64,000 bases of DNA from Oikopleura dioica (taxonomy: Eukaryota > Animalia > Chordata), in contig OU015566.1 in the NCBI GenBank assembly GCA_907165135.1, positions 7,006,001-7,070,000 of the forward strand, in the 5' to 3' direction. Of this stretch, positions 986-8,800 are shown one piece after another; the stretch's first letter is position 1, and the number at the start of each line of letters is the position of its first letter. The notes beneath the pieces are model-generated. The model had not been told where the DNA came from. It worked only from the letters and a program-made list of their open reading frames with translations, and made no database searches. A program made the position numbers and the translations under genes.

Positions 986-2140
986 GAAAAATTCTTTGAG
1001 AAAACATGCTTAGCAAATTCTTCTTTCAAAAATATATACTAGAAAATCCCAAAAGAACGCATTTGAAATCAGGTAACCTATTAAAAATTTATGATGTGGT
1101 CATATTTTCAAATAAAAATAAATGATTCCAAGATGAAGATCAGTCTTTAGGACGAGAATAATGCTCAAAAACATAAAAACAGTGCCTATCAGAATGGAAA
1201 AATCTCTGGTCGATGGAGATTTGAGTGCTTATTTAGGACTTTTCCTCCTTGATTCCACGAAAGTTTCAACACTTCCTTAGAATGGAAGCCAGTTCTTGTG
1301 AAATGAAAATATCTAGGAACGCTCAAACTCACTGGATCTTTGACTGAAAGACCTTGTATTCTACAAACCTCTGAGATTGTAGCGATGGCCGGAAATACTC
1401 TCATTCTGCTTTGCTGTTTCAGAATCGTCAAAGGCGTTTGTCAAAAGCCCTCGCGACTTGGAAAAACTATTTGGTATGTTGACTGGCTGGGACATAAAAA
1501 ATAATGACTGGGAGAAATATTTTTTGCCAGCGCGAATTTATCGAAAATTTGAAAAACAAAATGCTCAATCGTGCCCTCTCTAAAACGATGCATACAATCT
1601 CAGAGAGGCACGAAAGAGCAGATAACGAGGTCACAGCAGGTTCGACCTCGTGGTCGAAAAATATTTTCAAGCTGATTGAAGGGACTTTTGAGCTTCAAGT
1701 GGGCGGGGAAATTTAGATATGTTTTATTTTGTTTACAGTGAAAACTTAATTTATTTGCCTATTGTAAAAATCAAGCCGACTTGAAGTGAAAAGAAGCCGT
1801 TTTAATTTCACTTCTAGATGTATCATCAAAATACTTCACTTCAAGATTCATATTTTTCATGAGTTTATGTGCCAGACTGGTTTAGTTATCAAATCTGTGT
1901 GAACGAGTCTTTCAAAAAAGATATAATGCTTTTTGCATTTTTATTTTTTTCAGAGTGAATAGAGAATGAATCATCAATGGGGTTGCGCCAGTGGGAAAAT
2001 CGACTTTTTTTGCACTTGACCTGGAGGGATGAAATTTTGTGGACATATTTCTGAGGTCCTAATCAAGAAAAAAATCAAAAAAAAAATTCGAAAAATTAAG
2101 GGTATAGGGGTCATACTATGGTAGGCGCTCCAGAGCACAA

Positions 2141-3550
2141 GTCTCGAAAGAGACAATACAAAGATATCAGAAGGAGGACCCTGCTTTGTCGGGATTAATC
2201 CTTGCTGCCGAGAGAACAAATGGCCACGTTCTTGATAAAGGCAGTCGATATCGTCTGAAAGAGGACCTGCTGGTCCAGATAACAAAAGCTGGAAAGGAGC
2301 TCGTGGTGATACCGAAATCGCTGGGTCGGGACATCGTCCGTTACCTACACGTCGTTTCGGCTCACAGTGGAAGAAATGAAATGTTATCAGTATTAGATAG
2401 AGAGGACATTCTTATCAAGGGACGAGAGAGACTCGTCCGGGAAACAACACGCGAATGTTTGCTCTGTCACTTGACATCAAATCGATACAGATCCAGCGAA
2501 ATGAAGATGGTGATGAAACCGAACCTAAGTGGACCGTACCGGAAAGTATTTATTGATCTAGTTACGTTCCAAATTGAAACGCAAAATCGCGAACACGCTG
2601 TCAATTGTCTCACGATGGTTGACGATTTCTCATGCCGCCTTACTTATCGCTTTGTTCGAAATAAAACTGCTGCTGTCATATCAAAACGCCTACTTGAACT
2701 CACCTGCGAAGTCGGTGGACTTGGCCAGATGGAAGTCTTTAGCGACAATGGACTTGAATTCGTCGCCTCCAAGACTCAAGATCTTCTAGAATACCTTCAA
2801 ATGCACGCCGGACAGATCTCACCAACAAACGCTAGAGCCAATAAAGTCGAGCGCTGCCATAAATCTATTCGCGATAATCTACGAGCCATCGCCCTTACGG
2901 AATCAAACGCTCAGCACAAACTCGATCTTGCTGTTTCAACATATAATCATCAGGTGAAGTCAAGCCTCGACATGATGACTCCCATGGAAGTTCTTGGTAT
3001 TAAACCTCCAAGATACTTTTCTGCTTATCTCCAACACCGCCAAAACGAACCAAAATGCGATTCTATTCGAGAATTCACTCAAAATATCAATATTCTCTTC
3101 AAAAATCTATCTGCATTCAAGCTCAACCGATATCTCTTCAAATCGGAAGACTCAGCACCGCTACTTTCGGAAGGCGATATTGTTGTCTTGAAAGAAAACA
3201 GCCTCAGAAAACATGATCCTGGTCTTTCTGGACCATATGTGATCACGAACACACGTTCAAACAATTGCCACGATATCGAAAATCTATTCACCAGCCAGAA
3301 GCTGATGCGAAATGGCCGTTTTCTGAGAAAGGTTCATCTCAGCGAGGAAGATAAGAAAAATCTGACGTCAAAGAATTTGTTCATCAGAAAATCCGGACAT
3401 ATTCTCTTCGACGATAACGAAATCGATCTCGCGAAAAGTTCACTTGAGCAAGAACCCGAATTTCTTCTTCAACCCCAGGAAAGTAAAACTAAACCAAAAC
3501 CCAAATCCGATTCCAAAGTAGAAAGCTCTTACAATCTGCGCAAAAGATGA
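2141..3550 (+). CDS. pol: Pol C-terminal part: gypsy-type integrase
   Basis: Frame is open from the 2139 junction (ETIQRYQKEDPAL linker motif). HHCC finger LHVVSAHSG...ECLLC; D-D-E core FIDLV / FSDNG / KVERCH; GPY motif GPYVIT; no internal stops. Confidence 0.93.
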   Translation, partial: VSKETIQRYQKEDPALSGLILAAERTNGHVLDKGSRYRLKEDLLVQITKAGKELVVIPKSLGRDIVRYLHVVSAHSGRNEMLSVLDREDILIKGRERLVRETTRECLLCHLTSNRYRSSEMKMVMKPNLSGPYRKVFIDLVTFQIETQNREHAVNCLTMVDDFSCRLTYRFVRNKTAAVISKRLLELTCEVGGLGQMEVFSDNGLEFVASKTQDLLEYLQMHAGQISPTNARANKVERCHKSIRDNLRAIALTESNAQHKLDLAVSTYNHQVKSSLDMMTPMEVLGIKPPRYFSAYLQHRQNEPKCDSIREFTQNINILFKNLSAFKLNRYLFKSEDSAPLLSEGDIVVLKENSLRKHDPGLSGPYVITNTRSNNCHDIENLFTSQKLMRNGRFLRKVHLSEEDKKNLTSKNLFIRKSGHILFDDNEIDLAKSSLEQEPEFLLQPQESKTKPKPKSDSKVESSYNLRKR

Positions 3551-5253
3551 TCATTTTCTTCATCTTTCAACTAGCTCTAGCCAAACGATTTTTTATGATC
3601 GACTCCGGAAAGGCAGCATTCCTTGTCAAGTCCAAAATCGATAAAAACCTGCAACTGTCTTTGGACATCCCCGCCTTCAACTGGACCTATATCGATAATC
3701 CCTGCTTCAACAATCACTCAACTAAAGCTTATGCTCGCAACGGCACGCACCAGCTCTTCAATGAAATCGAAAATTGGATCAACGAAAATTTCAAAGAACA
3801 AGAATCCCATCGTCATCGCCGATTTATCGGTGACCCATTCCGTATCAACTTCTCATGGCCGTCACGCAAATCTCAAACTAAGGCCGCACTTGAAATTCTC
3901 AACAAGAAATCAACAACAAACGCGAAAGAAACTGTCGACCTGGTCAACATTGTCAACAAGGACTTGCTGGAGATTCAATCAGAAGTTATCAACGACGAAA
4001 CGAACTTTGAAAATTTTGTTGCTCAACTTTGCGATTTTGACGCAAAAATCTCTGCCTTGGTTATGAAACTTATCAACTCACTTCTGTTCGATGAATTTAA
4101 ATCAACAATCACTGGAATTTCCCACGTCGTCATCAAATCTGACTTGCAAAATCTTCTCTCAAGCCTTTGCTCGTTCGATTACGATGAACTTTACACAAAT
4201 TGCGCAAATATCATCAGTTCCTACCCGCTCCGCATAAAGAACATAAACTCTGAAATCTACGAAGACAAGATGATACTACAAATCAACGCCACAGCTAAAA
4301 TTCCGTCATTTGAAAAACTAGGAAATGCCACTCACATTCTGGAAGGACCGAAACCAATCAGCATTCAAGAAGACACCTTCATCTACGAAAAACTCATCCT
4401 TCCGCACACAATTGCGATTTCAAGCTCAACTTCAACTTCACTCGATCTCTGCGAGGACATTCACGACGCTTATATCTGCTCGTATGGACAAGTCAACAAT
4501 TTCAAACTCAACAAATGTGCTACTGATTTGGCAAACAACAATTCAACAAAGAACTGCGAAACAACTCTCATCAAAAGCGACAAGGATTGCCTATTCTCTC
4601 AGTTTCAACGTTACATCATGATAAGTCATTTTAATCAAATAGGTATTTCTTATTTTGACCGACGACACAAAAAACATTTCACCAACTTTACACATTCTGA
4701 TGGAAACTTCGTCTACCAGCTGACTAATAAACCAACGACACTTCACTGCACAAACGACATCTTCTACGCTCATTATGAAGAGACGCTAAATCACGTTCAA
4801 CTTCACACAACAAACACACTCGACCATTTTGACCTCATCAGTCAAGATGATTACCGCAACTCTCAAAATGTCCTCCAACACAAACGCGCAAATATCTCGA
4901 CAGCGGAATACAATGACATCGCGAACAAACTCACGGAGAATGAAACCTTTGGAAACAAAATCATCTCACACTACAAAACAAACTGGATATCGACTTTAAT
5001 GACGACCCTTCACACAATTGCTTCGATCATCATACTCCTGATAATTTTCAGAATCACAATCGCCTTTGCTCCACTACTTCGACAATTTTTAAATTTCATC
5101 TCATCAACAATAGCCTACGGATTGTCACGCCTTCTTCCCAAACTTCTCTTACTTCGCAAAGCTCAAACCGACGATAAAATCAACATGGACGATGCTTCAA
5201 GCCCGCCAACTCCTGAGAACCTCAAGGATCTCCCATTCTCGACTAACGCTTGA
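3547..5253 (+). CDS. env: Envelope-like glycoprotein of the retrotransposon (568 aa)
   Basis: ATG overlaps the pol stop (ATGA). Hydrophobic signal peptide MIIFFIFQLALA, furin-like site RHRR|FIG, Cys-rich ectodomain with NxS/T sequons, C-terminal TM segment (IASIIILLIIFRITIAFAPLL) and short tail. Confidence 0.88.
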   Translation: MIIFFIFQLALAKRFFMIDSGKAAFLVKSKIDKNLQLSLDIPAFNWTYIDNPCFNNHSTKAYARNGTHQLFNEIENWINENFKEQESHRHRRFIGDPFRINFSWPSRKSQTKAALEILNKKSTTNAKETVDLVNIVNKDLLEIQSEVINDETNFENFVAQLCDFDAKISALVMKLINSLLFDEFKSTITGISHVVIKSDLQNLLSSLCSFDYDELYTNCANIISSYPLRIKNINSEIYEDKMILQINATAKIPSFEKLGNATHILEGPKPISIQEDTFIYEKLILPHTIAISSSTSTSLDLCEDIHDAYICSYGQVNNFKLNKCATDLANNNSTKNCETTLIKSDKDCLFSQFQRYIMISHFNQIGISYFDRRHKKHFTNFTHSDGNFVYQLTNKPTTLHCTNDIFYAHYEETLNHVQLHTTNTLDHFDLISQDDYRNSQNVLQHKRANISTAEYNDIANKLTENETFGNKIISHYKTNWISTLMTTLHTIASIIILLIIFRITIAFAPLLRQFLNFISSTIAYGLSRLLPKLLLLRKAQTDDKINMDDASSPPTPENLKDLPFSTNA

Positions 5254-5564
5254 GTCGACTTTGCTCTCATCAACAATTCAAAATCCAAAAACAAAACAAA
5301 AAAAAATTCTCAAAATTCAACAAAAAATTCAAAAGAAAAATATTCAAAAGAAAGAAAAGACAAAAAAATACTCAAAACAAATGAAAATCAAAAAAATATT
5401 AACTAACTCCCTTTCTGTACCATAATGAACAATTCGCACTTTCTTTACTGTTCACTTCCAAACAAACTCTTTACTGCACTAACACGAGTTCACGATTCAT
5501 TTATTCCATCAAACCCGATAAACACTGAAACAGTTAGGACAAGTCTCAAGCTCCGCTGGGAAGG

Positions 5565-5879
5565 TGGAGAAGCATTCGTTGCACAAAGCCGAAGCGAGAC
5601 TCGACACGTTCAACCGGACTTGCTGTGCCGACTCCTGGACTCGATCTGATTCACATACAAACCGACCGTCTATTTACAAGATAAGATAATTTCGACACAC
5701 TTATTACCTGATCGTAGTCTCACCCGTATTGTCTCATTTGAACCTCTCTCTCGCATCCTCCTCATGATATCTCCCAACTTATCGAGCAAGATTCTCAAAT
5801 TCTCGAACATTCTCTGAACTAAAAGCAAAAGTTAGACGTTATTTGTAAGCACTTGGGCCGATAACTCACTTATGCTACA
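5565..5879 (+). repeat. 3' LTR of the Tor-like element (about 315 bp)
   Basis: Starts TGGAG right after the PPT and ends CTACA, followed by an abrupt switch to AT-rich DNA. No 5' LTR survives for comparison. Confidence 0.6.
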
Positions 5880-6134
5880 TTAAATAATAACATAATGAAT
5901 ATGAAAATTTTTAAAATGAAAATACTACATCTATGCAAAATTTAGAATCCCTCCGAATTTCTTATATCCTATAAAATGAATAAACAAAATTTCGATGATT
6001 ACCTAGACAAGCCCCGTCAGTAGGACTTGATTATGATTAAAAATGATTTTATTTGAAATAAAAATTCAAAAATTAAAAATGACTCTTGATTTAAAAAATC
6101 AACGATAGGTATCAGAAATCAGGATATATATAAT

Positions 6135-7346
6135 TTATTTACAGGTGCGTAGAGAACATTCACTAGAAATCAGAGTTCGAGCATTTGCATCATGCTCATC
6201 AAATAAGCGCGTACCAAAGTCAGTTAGGGCCTCATGTCGCATCTCAGTAAATTTCAGATTAGTAAGTTCAGTGAAGCCAGCGGGAAGGGATTCGTTATTA
6301 GTATACATATTCACATAATATTCGAATGTAAAATAATCTATGAGCTTGCAGCATTTAGGAAAACCCATATACCCTTCCATTAGATAATCATCGACAAATT
6401 GACCTCTAGTCTTACAGCTAAGGTCGAGGCCGGAGTCTTTGAGAATCCTGAGAACCTCCCCACGGTCAAGCAAGAGAAGTGGTAACTGATACTGTAAATG
6501 TTTGATTTTTTCGTAAAAGATAGGGTCATCAAAAAGTACATTCGCATAGGACCTAATAAAAGTTTTAATTCGCCCTCCGTATTTCGAAAAAGTTCTATCA
6601 GAACAGGTCTCCCAGACATAACATATTCGCCTTCGTTTGTTAATAAAACTCTCGGAATTTTGCCGGGCGCCACCGCTTTAGAGAAATTTTCATGAATAAT
6701 TCAATTCAAATTTATAGTATAAAACGTTCAAAATTTTCAGAAAATAAGGCTTAATAATACATTCTTATTTATTTAGATATAAATTATACTACTATTTCAA
6801 TATTAATTCCTTCCTAAAACTTCATATTCTTGTCGGTCGGGATCCGCTCGTTCTTGATATCGATTTTCGAGGGACTTGCCTTGAGCAGTTCGAACCAGCT
6901 ACAATTAAAAAATAGAATCTATAGTTTTAGTATGATCAGAAACTCTAGACAATATGTGTCTTGTGCGTTCGCACCAAGAGCTCTTCTCATGATCATCCGT
7001 CCGGCAGGCAGGATGCTAGGCAATCAGGCCGTTTTTAGTATTTAATTATGTTAGTTTTTTTGTTAATACCGTTCTTTGTTTAAATTCCTCGATTTCCATT
7101 CGCCTTTAAAAATAATTATTTATTCATTTTACAGTCATTTTTACATAGGGACGATGTCGTGACTTTCTCCCAAGGGCCCCGCTTCACTCGCGACGAGAGT
7201 TGATACAGTGCTAGAATTAAATTTAGAAAATAGGCTTCAATCATTAACAAAATTGAATTTAGAAATAACTGACCATATATTTATAAATAAGATAATAATT
7301 TTTACCTTTCCGCATAGTTTATTTTGATCCTCTTACGAAGATTCAT
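6135..7346 (-). CDS. Five-exon orphan gene, 265 aa, inside the LTR-like element
   Basis: Exons 7346-7306, 7210-7145, 7015-6944, 6898-6821 and 6675-6135. All four introns are GT-AG and phase 2, and splicing gives one uninterrupted ORF (MNLRKRIKINYAESTVSTLV...ICYVWETCSDRTF...GFPKCCKLIDYFTFEYY...RTCK*). The last exon alone is a 180-codon open frame. Confidence 0.75.
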
Positions 7347-7915
7347 TTTGTTATCCCTCTTAAATAAATTCTCTTTAAGTAAATACATTAATCTCTAATA
7401 AATTATAATTACAGAATAAAAAATTTATTCCAAAACAGTTTAAAACTGCCCTCTCTCTTTCTCTCTCTCTCTCTCTTTCCGCGCGTATTCCTTATCAGCC
7501 GGCGCGGCGTTCTCACCAACTACTGCAGACCCCCGATTCTTATTTTCCCACGACCCCCCATTCTCTCCACGCGCGCGCGGGCTTATCACTTTTCACCTCC
7601 AAATTCTCTCCTTTCGGCGCGCGCTCTCGTCTCCGCCGTTTTCCTCCTTTTTTGCTCCCTTATCAGTATATTTTCATTTTCATTTTTTTCATTTTCCATT
7701 TTCAATTTTCTCGCTCGTTCAAATTTCAAAGTACTGAAATTTCGACACGAAACACTAGTAGCACCTAAGTACACTGTTCCAAATTTATTATTCCTTGAAA
7801 ATCTTTATTCTTATTATTATATACAGAAGAAAGAAGAAACTGTTCATTTACTTTATTTTACTCTCACTCTTCCTTGATTTCAACTGCAAATAAAATTTTC
7901 TGAACAAGGGGGGAG

Positions 7916-8036
7916 TACTATGGTAGGCGCTCCAGAGCACGAGAGCGCGTCCTCAAAAAGGGACGTCTCTCGGGCCCAGGGCGCAGTCAGCCCGCACTCT
8001 CCCCGACAGTCAGACAGCCCGTCCGAGCCAGTTGTA
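7916..8036 (+). repeat. Putative 121-bp 3' terminal repeat (LTR) of the inner element
   Basis: Lies between the PPT (7906-7915) and the GGTCA duplication (8037-8041). GC-rich; its first 25 bp are identical to 2114-2138. Confidence 0.55.
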
Positions 8037-8308
8037 GGTCAAAAAATCGATTTTTTTATTTTTGCCAAATTAAGCCTGATTAAACCTAGACGATCATTTA
8101 AAAAGCTCAAAAATGTTTTTTTCGAGCCGAAAAAAGTCAAGGGAAGATAAAAAATCCGCAAAAAAAAAGAAATTTAAATTTTAAAGAATTTCAATAAGAA
8201 CCATAATTAGGCGAAGAGCTCGAATAATTTGTATTTTCACCCCGTATGGGTGTGGGTGGGGTTGGGGAAATAACTGAGATTGATCACCTCAGAGTTCAAC
8301 GCCGATCT

Positions 8309-8800
8309 CAAGCCCCTTAAATTTAATAATCAAGGAACGGGGCTGAGACGGCCCGAAGGGCCGTCAAGCCCCTTAAATTTAATAATCAAGGAACGGGGCT
8401 GAGACGGCCCGAAGGGCCGTCAAGCCCCTTAAATTTAATAATCAAGGAACGGGGCTGAGACGGCCCGAAGGGCCGTCAAGCCCTTAAATTTAATAATCAA
8501 GGAACGGGGCTGAGACGGCCCGAAGGGCCGTCAAGCCCCTTAAATTTAATAATCAAGGAACGAGGCTGAGACGGCCCGAAGGGCCGTCAAGCCCTTAAAT
8601 TTAATAATCAAGGAACGGGGCTGAGACGGCCCGAAGGGCCGTCAAGCCCCTTAAATTTAATAATCAAGGAACGGGGCTGAGACGGCCCGAAGGGCCGTCA
8701 AGCCCCTTAAATTTAATAATCAAGGAACGGGGCTGAGACGGCCCGAAGGGCCGTCAAGCCCCTTAAATTTAATAATCAAGGAACGGGGCTGAGACGGCCT
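8309..8800. repeat. Tandem array of 55-56-bp units, each with a GAA-triloop hairpin (8 full copies plus 1 partial)
   Basis: Unit CCCCTTAAATTTAATAATCAAGGAACGGGGCTGAGACGGCCCGAAGGGCCGTCAAG, nearly invariant. GACGGCCC-GAA-GGGCCGTC forms a perfect 8-bp stem. Confidence 0.97.

What the first reader, a model, noticed from the sequence alone, without database searches (positions are those of the whole stretch)
6135..7346. Orphan 265-aa protein missed by the ORF track; all four introns are phase 2
The ORF track shows only fragments, but four GT-AG introns (95, 129, 45 and 145 bp) join five exons into one open frame with no stops. An intact frame inside a triply nested, partly deleted TE context suggests recent mobility or selection. 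The N-terminus has a basic LRKRIKINYAE motif (NLS/chromatin-binding-like, inference). I see no DDE, tyrosine-recombinase, HUH or RT motif, so it looks like cargo or a novel accessory protein rather than a mobilising enzyme.
Basis: partly seen in the sequence, partly recalled or inferred. Interest (0 to 1): 0.75.

Follow-up and report, generated by a model that had tools for sequence, protein, structure and literature searches.

The report
Backward spliced gene inside a retroelement
A small intron-bearing gene lies backwards inside a retrovirus-like jumping element of the tunicate Oikopleura; it belongs to a tiny Oikopleura-only protein family of unknown function, and this window's copy has a one-base frame break, so the 265-residue protein as drawn is probably not what the family encodes.

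Summary
An open spliced path over exons 1-4 is common by chance: 20% of shuffles and 46% of genomic controls have one.

Better evidence for a real gene:
- Exons 2-4 are 49-56% GC; the introns are 18-26%.
- A sister copy differs at 0 of 257 bases in exons 1-4 and at 9 of 414 intron bases.
- AATAAA overlaps the stop codon.
- Exon 5 has two homologues, including O. dioica CBY23331.1, so the protein is not a strict orphan.

Both homologues, and the sister copy, read the first 38 codons of exon 5 in a different frame. The copies differ by one T in a run at 6558-6561.

The gene lies antisense between an env-like ORF and the polypurine tract plus 121-bp 3' LTR of a Tor-like Ty3/gypsy element (2114-8036, 5-bp target duplication). 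That element is a deletion derivative lacking gag, protease and RT.

The closest known kind is the antisense additional ORF of plant LTR retrotransposons; here it has four introns. Function is unknown. The scan also noted this gene's sister copy, and other antisense spliced genes in other LTR elements of this genome.

The parts
2109..2113 (.). Left copy of the 5-bp target-site duplication, GGTCA
   Evidence: The same 5 bases follow the 3' LTR at 8037-8041. Paralogous copies of the host repeat run straight across this site without the insert.
2114..2138 (+). Stub of the 5' LTR (first 25 nt), joined directly to the integrase region. This is an internal deletion of the rest of the LTR, gag, protease and RT.
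   Evidence: Identical to the start of the 3' LTR at 7916-7940. The near-full copy 2 has about 4.6 kb here, with RVT_1 and RNase H hits.
2186..3550 (+). Integrase ORF (454 codons)
   Evidence: Pfam rve 1.7e-9 and Integrase_H2C2. Against copy 2 it has 24 synonymous and 11 non-synonymous differing codons.
3547..5253 (+). env-like third sense ORF (568 aa)
   Evidence: ORF. No Pfam hit. Read by eye: hydrophobic N-terminus, an RHRR site followed by a hydrophobic stretch, and a C-terminal membrane-span-like stretch. There are 22-31% identical paralogues in other elements of this genome.
5254..6134 (-). Spacer between the env stop and the antisense gene's stop (probable 3' UTR or downstream region of the antisense gene)
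   Evidence: 33% GC; 9 differences from copy 2 in 881 nt.
6131..6136 (-). AATAAA poly(A) signal overlapping the TAA stop (6137-6135)
   Evidence: Read.
6135..6675 (-). From 6557 down to the stop it is in the frame shared with the homologues (about 141 codons).
6558..6561 (-). Run of 4 T (5 T in copy 2). This is where the conserved frame upstream (ORF 6380-6673) and the conserved frame downstream (ORF 6135-6473) fall out of register in the window copy.
   Evidence: Copy alignment; translations; anchored alignment test; sequence.
6650..6652 (-). Alternative AG (6652-6651) with exon start at 6650. Its pyrimidine context is poor.
   Evidence: Enumeration of last-intron choices.
6676..6820 (-). Intron 4 (145 nt, GT..AG, 19% GC)
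   Evidence: 3 differences from copy 2.
6821..6898 (-). Exon 4 (78 nt, 49% GC)
   Evidence: Open in frame. 0 differences from copy 2.
6899..6943 (-). Intron 3 (45 nt, GT..AG, T-rich 3' end)
6944..7015 (-). Exon 3 (72 nt, 51% GC)
   Evidence: Open in frame. 0 differences from copy 2.
7016..7144 (-). Intron 2 (129 nt, GT..AG, 26% GC)
   Evidence: 4 differences from copy 2.
7145..7210 (-). Exon 2 (66 nt, 56% GC)
   Evidence: Open in frame. Identical in copies 2 and 3.
7211..7305 (-). Intron 1 (95 nt, GT..AG, 18% GC)
7306..7346 (-). Exon 1 with ATG at 7346 and the basic patch RKRIK
   Evidence: Identical in copies 2 and 3.
7347..7905 (-). Region upstream of the antisense gene (presumed promoter): an AT-rich 100 nt, a (GA)n run, then a stretch that varies strongly between copies
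   Evidence: 43 difference events in 567 nt against copy 2, including 11 indels. Variable against copy 3 as well.
7906..7915 (+). Polypurine tract AAGGGGGGAG directly before the 3' LTR
7916..8036 (+). 3' LTR, 121 bp (127 bp in copies 2 and 3)
   Evidence: The same unit stands at the 5' end of copy 2. All three copies end at the same base.
8037..8041 (.). Right copy of the target-site duplication, GGTCA

Best explanation
The feature is an antisense, intron-containing accessory gene of an env-bearing Ty3/gypsy (Tor-like) LTR retroelement, in a genome that matches Oikopleura dioica OKI2018_I69.

Shown:
- The element (window 2114-8036) is a true insertion with a 5-bp target duplication.
- The gene lies on the opposite strand, between the env-like ORF and the polypurine tract plus 3' LTR.
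- It is kept in every copy of the element that retains that region.
- Its last exon encodes a roughly 160-residue domain shared with O. dioica CBY23331.1 and one unnamed protein.

Inferred:
- The gene is transcribed from its own promoter in the variable region next to the 3' LTR, spliced four times and polyadenylated at the AATAAA on its stop codon.
- Its introns survive retrotransposition because they are in the wrong orientation on the element's genomic RNA and so cannot be spliced out of it.
- The product is a small, probably nuclear protein that serves the element, by analogy with maize Grande gene23 and HTLV-1 HBZ. This last step is the weakest.

The window copy is a decaying one. Its element lacks gag, protease and RT. 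The coding frame of exon 5 is out of register with the family's frame at the T run 6558-6561. The 265-residue reading is open only because the other frame happens to stay open up to the acceptor at 6675.
For: Identity of the genome: 64,281,565 bases in 19 contigs against 64.3 Mbp in 19 scaffolds for OKI2018_I69 (PMC8008620).

Element anatomy:
- rve and H2C2 integrase.
- RVT_1, RNase H and rve in the near-full copy 2.
- Polypurine tract, 121-127-bp LTRs and target duplications GGTCA (this copy) and GATGA (copy 3).
- Empty sites in paralogous host repeats.

Gene reality:
- GC 0.49-0.56 in exons 2-4 against 0.18-0.26 in the introns, changing exactly at the GT/AG sites.
- Differences from copy 2: 0 of 257 in exons 1-4, 3 of 541 in exon 5, 9 of 414 in introns (Fisher p 0.004).
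- AATAAA on the stop.
- Homologues: P0002 at E 4.6e-5 against 1.84 billion proteins, pairwise 2e-11 over 163 residues; P0003 = CBY23331.1 at profile E 4e-37.

Frame break:
- One T more in copy 2.
- Copy 2 has one 188-codon open frame over the whole domain.
- The homologues match copy 2 from about 30 residues further upstream than they match the window copy.

No enzyme domain was found.

Precedent: antisense additional ORFs between pol and the 3' LTR (PMC7264820).
Against: - No transcript data could be consulted, so no splice junction, promoter or poly(A) site is shown.
- Only two full copies and one fragment exist, all on one chromosome.
- Between copies the coding part has only 2 substitutions (1 synonymous, 1 not), so no dN/dS can be given.
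- The low difference count in exons could partly reflect a higher indel or error rate in AT-rich homopolymer-laden introns of a Nanopore-based assembly.
- No fold or domain gives any hint of function (AF2 pLDDT 34 and 39).
- How exon 4 joins the conserved frame of exon 5 is unresolved. The good acceptor at 6675 gives the non-conserved frame. The frame-keeping AG at 6652-6651 has a poor context.
Confidence: 0.7

Rival explanations
1. Transduced host gene. The element picked up a cellular Oikopleura gene (a relative of CBY23331.1) in reverse orientation and carries it as passive cargo with no role in the element's life.
For: The only named relative is annotated as an ordinary O. dioica protein of 301 aa. 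The gene has host-like short GT-AG introns, one of 45 nt. Gene capture by LTR elements is known (PMC7264820).
Against: No copy outside the element exists in this genome, by protein, profile or homologue searches. Identity to the Bergen protein is only 26-28%, far for a host orthologue. The gene occupies the same slot (antisense, just inside the polypurine tract and 3' LTR) that unrelated antisense ORFs take in other elements here (scan notes, untested).
Confidence: 0.15
2. The reader's 265-residue protein is the true product of this copy. The acceptor at 6675 and the 4-T run are real, and the 38 residues in the other frame are a tolerated or new linker ahead of the conserved C-terminal 141 residues.
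For: The frame is open end to end. The acceptor at 6675 has the best context. The conserved C-terminal part is in frame.
Against: The 38 residues show no similarity to the homologues, whereas the overlapping frame does. The sister copy meets TAG with this model. About 38 open codons in a second frame is not rare. The element around it is itself defective.
Confidence: 0.1
3. Assembly artefact at the T run. Both loci really carry the same number of T, and the apparent frame difference is a homopolymer error in a Nanopore-based assembly of two 99% identical repeats.
For: The assembly is Nanopore plus Illumina polishing (PMC8008620). 5 of the 12 differences in the gene are 1-nt indels in A or T runs.
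Against: A 4-versus-5 run is short for a residual error after Pilon polishing. The two copies also differ by true substitutions nearby (6495, 6450).
Confidence: 0.15
4. Not a protein gene. It is a chance ORF, or only a non-coding antisense transcript that regulates the element through double-stranded RNA.
For: Open spliced paths are common by chance. Protein-language-model recognition is low and the structure models are poor. Antisense non-coding RNAs of retroelements are known (PMC7264820).
Against: Significant, full-length protein similarity to two independent database proteins in one frame. An exon/intron GC step and a matching difference pattern.
Confidence: 0.05

Closest known systems
Antisense additional ORFs between pol and the 3' LTR of LTR retrotransposons (aORF-3R: maize Grande gene23, rice RIRE2, Silene Retand, Phaseolus PvRetro13; Botrytis Boty brtn), as reviewed in PMC7264820
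   Same: Same slot (after the last sense gene, just inside the 3' LTR) and opposite strand. Present in the copies of the family rather than in one copy. No similarity to known proteins. Presumed own promoter. A basic nuclear-signal-like patch.
   Different: The host is a chordate (tunicate), not a plant or fungus. The element also carries an env-like gene. The gene is split by four introns; the two reviews read here (PMC7264820, PMC11963269) mention none. There is no sequence relation to any of those ORFs.
HTLV-1 HBZ (spliced antisense gene of a retrovirus, transcribed from the 3' LTR)
   Same: An antisense, spliced, protein-coding gene at the 3' end of a retrovirus-like element that also has env. 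The product is likely nuclear.
   Different: HBZ is a bZIP protein with one intron and starts in the 3' LTR. Here there is no bZIP or any other Pfam domain, there are four introns, and the first exon lies about 570 nt inside the element, not in the 121-bp LTR.
Tor elements (Ty3/gypsy of Oikopleura) with env, Volff et al. 2004 and Henriet et al. 2015 (PMC4402516)
   Same: Same host species complex. LTR, gag-pol, env layout with RT, RNase H, integrase order. An env-like third ORF. Young, low-copy insertions.
   Different: Those papers, as far as searched, describe no antisense gene. The LTRs here are very short (121-127 bp). RT phylogeny against named Tor clades was not done.
O. dioica CBY23331.1 / E4X0N2_OIKDI (301 aa, uncharacterised) and an unnamed 175-aa protein from a Logan/ENA contig
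   Same: Shared conserved domain of roughly 160 residues at 26-28% identity. CBY23331.1 also has a basic PKKKVRFK patch upstream of the domain.
   Different: The N-terminal parts are not alignable with exons 1-4. The window copy is out of frame with them over the first ~30 aligned residues. Their genomic context is unknown.

Membership tests
Antisense additional ORF of LTR retrotransposons (aORF-3R kind) | Lies inside an LTR retroelement, between the last sense gene and the polypurine tract plus 3' LTR | tested here: met
   Gene at 6135-7346; env-like ORF ends at 5253; polypurine tract 7906-7915; LTR 7916-8036; target duplication and empty sites.
Antisense additional ORF of LTR retrotransposons (aORF-3R kind) | Opposite strand to gag-pol(-env) | tested here: met
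   Integrase and env are on the + strand, the gene on the - strand.
Antisense additional ORF of LTR retrotransposons (aORF-3R kind) | Present in all or most copies of the element family, not in a single transduced copy | tested here: met
   Both copies that keep the region carry the whole gene. Copy 3, a separate integration with its own target duplication (GATGA, against GGTCA for the window copy), keeps exons 1-2 up to its deletion point. Only three copies exist.
Antisense additional ORF of LTR retrotransposons (aORF-3R kind) | Transcribed in antisense from its own promoter | not testable with these tools
   No transcript data were available.
Tor-like env-bearing Ty3/gypsy element | RT, RNase H, integrase order; LTRs; polypurine tract; target duplication | tested here: met
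   Pfam RVT_1, RT_RNaseH and rve in that order in copy 2; LTRs, polypurine tract and duplications.
Tor-like env-bearing Ty3/gypsy element | Third sense ORF is a viral fusion glycoprotein | tested here: inconclusive
   No Pfam hit. Signal-like N-terminus, an RHRR site and a C-terminal membrane span were read by eye only. Paralogues exist in other elements.
Tor-like env-bearing Ty3/gypsy element | RT clusters with named Tor clades | not tested
   No reference Tor sequences were at hand.
CBY23331.1 protein family | Significant similarity over the conserved domain | tested here: met
   E 4.6e-5 library-wide and 2e-11 pairwise for P0002; profile E 4e-37 for P0003.
CBY23331.1 protein family | The domain is encoded in one continuous frame in this copy | tested here: not met
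   In the window copy the domain is split between two frames at 6558-6561. It is continuous in copy 2.
Mobilising enzymes (DDE transposase, tyrosine recombinase, HUH, RT) | Matching catalytic domain | tested here: not met
   No Pfam family for exon 5, for the sister ORF, for exons 2-4 or for the homologues. No PDB sequence match.
HBZ-type retroviral antisense protein | bZIP domain | tested here: not met
   No bZIP hit in Pfam.

The most novel reading that the evidence does not exclude
Env-bearing Tor-like retroelements of Oikopleura regularly keep a fourth, antisense gene slot just inside the 3' LTR. The slot is filled in different families by unrelated multi-intron genes. The introns are protected from loss because they are antisense on the genomic RNA. 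This family's product is a nuclear factor that the element needs, or uses against host silencing. That would make these elements natural vehicles for spliced genes in a chordate genome.
Probability: 0.25. Interest if true: 0.7.

Novelty: new variant of a known kind. Interest (0 to 1): 0.45.

Why it matters
Antisense extra genes in LTR retroelements are known mainly from plants, and their roles are still open. A four-intron antisense gene moving with an env-bearing, retrovirus-like element in a tunicate would be a clear animal example.

It shows how a retroelement can carry an intron-bearing gene without losing the introns. It also gives a small, experimentally tractable genome in which to ask what such genes do.

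For annotation, it shows that an open spliced frame alone is weak evidence. Here the open 265-codon reading hides a frame break that only the sister copy and distant homologues reveal.

Tried and rejected
- Pfam on exon 5, on both overlapping frames, on the sister ORF, on exons 2-4 and on both homologues: nothing above noise. Peptidase_M44 at E 0.03-0.1 and DUF7792 at 0.0014 are both below their cut-offs.
- PDB sequence profile search: nothing.
- ESM Atlas, twice: only unnamed phage or bacterial clusters, with recognition below the useful level.
- AlphaFold2 on the sister ORF, alone and with the 3-row alignment: pLDDT 34 and 39. No fold search was run, because a match to such a model would mean nothing.
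- P0001 (973 aa), the top hit of the big search, is a bacterial repeat protein that matches a 46-residue stretch six times. Rejected as chance inflated by repeats.
- Metagenome contig scan with the family alignment: none.
- Weak profile hit at C5:930649 (E 0.16): it has a stop inside and lies next to a gag-like ORF. Treated as noise.
- Similarity of the homologue's N-terminus to exons 1-4 or to the upstream region: noise only.
- A nested DNA transposon carrying the gene: the only inverted repeats (5897-5924 and 7669-7696) are A/T low complexity, and no copy of that interval exists outside the retroelement.
- Rfam over 1900-8300: no match.

Full report
**What is at the coordinates.** On the minus strand an ATG at 7346 opens a reading frame that runs through five blocks: 7346-7306, 7210-7145, 7015-6944, 6898-6821 and 6675-6135. 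They are separated by GT..AG intervals of 95, 129, 45 and 145 nt, all in phase 2, and the frame ends at TAA 6137-6135. The arithmetic is 41+66+72+78+541 = 798 nt, or 265 codons.

**Is it more than chance?** For the four small exons the open frame itself is not. I asked whether any stop-free path with up to four canonical introns (40-200 nt, exons of 30 nt or more) links a fixed ATG to the exon-5 acceptor in the right phase. Such a path exists in 60 of 300 dinucleotide shuffles of the same 671 nt, and in 38 of 83 other ATG...AG stretches of this window.

Three other things argue for real exons:
- GC content steps from 0.49-0.56 in exons 2-4 to 0.18-0.26 in the introns, exactly at the proposed sites.
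- A 99% identical sister copy at C4:6552452-6553666 differs at 0 of 257 positions in exons 1-4, 3 of 541 in exon 5 and 9 of 414 in the introns (Fisher p 0.004).
- An AATAAA overlaps the stop codon.

All internal exons are multiples of three, which is why all phases are equal. I found no repeat or other reason behind that.

**Where it lies.** The genome has 64,281,565 bases in 19 contigs, matching the published Oikopleura dioica OKI2018_I69 assembly (64.3 Mbp, 19 scaffolds; PMC8008620). This identification is an inference.

The gene sits inside a mobile unit spanning window 2114-8036:
- On the + strand the unit has an integrase ORF (2186-3550; Pfam rve and H2C2) and a 568-codon env-like ORF (3547-5253).
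- After the antisense gene come a polypurine tract (7906-7915) and a 121-bp LTR (7916-8036).
- The unit is flanked by a 5-bp duplication, GGTCA (2109-2113 and 8037-8041).
- It interrupts a high-copy repeat whose other copies run straight across the site.
- At its left end only the first 25 nt of the LTR remain, joined directly to the integrase region.

The sister copy (copy 2) is the longer form. It has a complete 5' LTR, about 4.6 kb with RVT_1, RNase H and integrase hits, a 1.46-kb internal duplication, env, the antisense gene and a 3' LTR.

A third copy at C4:7913345-7914293 is a more extreme deletion form. It has an LTR stub, then window-equivalent 7104-8036 (exons 1-2 only), with its own duplication GATGA.

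So the gene has moved with the element at least twice. I verified one layer of nesting.

**Not an orphan, and not in one frame.**
- A word-based search with the sister copy's 187-residue open frame found nothing.
- The full HMMER scan of 1.84 billion representatives found a 175-aa unnamed protein from a Logan/ENA contig (P0002, E 4.6e-5; pairwise 2e-11 over 163 residues).
- A profile of the two then found O. dioica CBY23331.1 / E4X0N2_OIKDI, 301 aa (P0003, E 4e-37).
- A third round added no more.

Both relatives align with the sister copy in a single frame, from about 30 residues upstream of where they start to align with the window copy. The cause is one base. A run of T at 6558-6561 has four T here and five in the sister copy.

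Upstream of the run the conserved reading is the frame of the listed ORF 6380-6673. Downstream it is the frame of ORF 6135-6473. I aligned the 37 codons upstream of the run to the homologues, anchored at the run. The conserved frame scored above nearly all shuffles (p 0.001 and 0.007).

In the sister copy the same model meets TAG after 39 codons of exon 5. A homopolymer error in the Nanopore-based assembly cannot be excluded.

**The unresolved junction.** With the donor at 6821/6820, the well-formed acceptor at 6676/6675 leads into the non-conserved frame. The only AG that leads into the conserved frame while keeping all of exon 4 is at 6652-6651, and it has a weak pyrimidine context. With it the sister copy reads through to the normal stop, and the window copy stops at 6382-6380. 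The weak similarity of the homologues to residues just upstream of 6650 argues slightly against that site. Transcript data are needed. Exon 5 and exons 2-4 were searched by reference, and exon 1 (13 codons) is too short for the tools.

**What the protein is.** There is no Pfam family, no PDB relative, no useful Atlas neighbour and no confident structure. Exon 1 has the basic patch RKRIK, and CBY23331.1 has PKKKVRFK ahead of the shared domain, so a nuclear location is plausible but only inferred. In this genome the domain exists only in the two element copies.

**How it most likely works.** The structure is shown: an antisense gene in the slot between env and the polypurine tract plus 3' LTR, carried through independent integrations. 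The rest is inferred:
- The gene has its own promoter in the AT-rich and variable region 7347-7905.
- The transcript is spliced four times.
- The introns persist because they are in antisense on the element's genomic RNA, so they cannot be removed before reverse transcription.

For function I commit, at low confidence, to an element-serving nuclear accessory protein, by analogy with Grande gene23 and HBZ (PMC7264820). The main rival is a transduced host gene. Arguing against it are the lack of any host copy here and the 26-28% identity to the Bergen protein.

**Comparison with what is known.** Antisense additional ORFs between pol and the 3' LTR are well described in plants and in Botrytis. 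The Retand review and the rotifer ORF-capture paper mention no introns in such genes. [quoted passage not shown] Within the library searched, a four-intron antisense gene in a tunicate env-bearing element is not described, so I rate it a new variant of a known kind.

Earlier notes of this scan report the sister copy and several other antisense spliced genes in other LTR elements of this genome. I took these as leads only. My own partial check found unrelated antisense open frames downstream of env in two other element families.

**Verdict.** This is a real, element-borne, intron-containing antisense gene of a small Oikopleura-specific family. The particular 265-residue protein drawn for this window is probably not the family's product, because this copy is out of register at a T run and sits in a defective element. 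Interest is moderate for this copy and higher for the general pattern.

Noticed in passing
window 1972-2113 and 8037-8800: The retroelement is inserted in a very high-copy repeat (more than 190 matches in the genome at 87-98% identity). The inner part of that repeat is a tandem array with a step of about 55 bp. Other copies run uninterrupted across the insertion site.
   Followed up: partly
window 2114-2141; L029 around 3345 (C4:7913345): Two independent deletion derivatives keep only the first ~19-25 nt of the 5' LTR, joined to an internal point (integrase here, intron 2 of the antisense gene in copy 3). Each still has a clean 5-bp target duplication. So they were integrated as deleted forms, perhaps after template switching during reverse transcription.
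   Followed up: partly
L024:6299 to L027:8371 (C4:6542299-6554371): The near-full sister element has a 1.46-kb tandem duplication of window-equivalent 2327-3784 (part of the integrase region and the start of the env-like ORF) and no matching 5-bp target duplication, suggesting rearrangement or recombination between two elements.
   Followed up: partly
window 2327-8036 against copy 2: Divergence between the two copies is mosaic: integrase 2.7% (24 synonymous, 11 non-synonymous codons), env 0.65%, antisense gene about 1%, region 7347-7913 7.6% with 11 indels. This may reflect recombination between element lineages or a hypervariable promoter region.
   Followed up: no
L051 (C1:5446001-5456000) and L054 (C4:5092001-5102000); L052 (C5:805001-815000): Other env-bearing elements of this genome also have open frames on the opposite strand downstream of env: a 201-codon one about 500 nt after env in L051/L054, and several of 92-156 codons in L052. 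They have no Pfam hit; the L051 frame, the one compared, shows no similarity to this family.
   Followed up: partly
G000:C3:1583158-1583582: An isolated fragment 80-86% identical to the N-terminal 140 residues of the env-like ORF, with two stops. It is a remnant of a related element on another chromosome.
   Followed up: no
window 7450-7478: A (GA)n run lies about 100 nt upstream of the antisense gene's ATG. It varies in length between the copies and is followed by an AT-rich stretch with TATA-like words.
   Followed up: no
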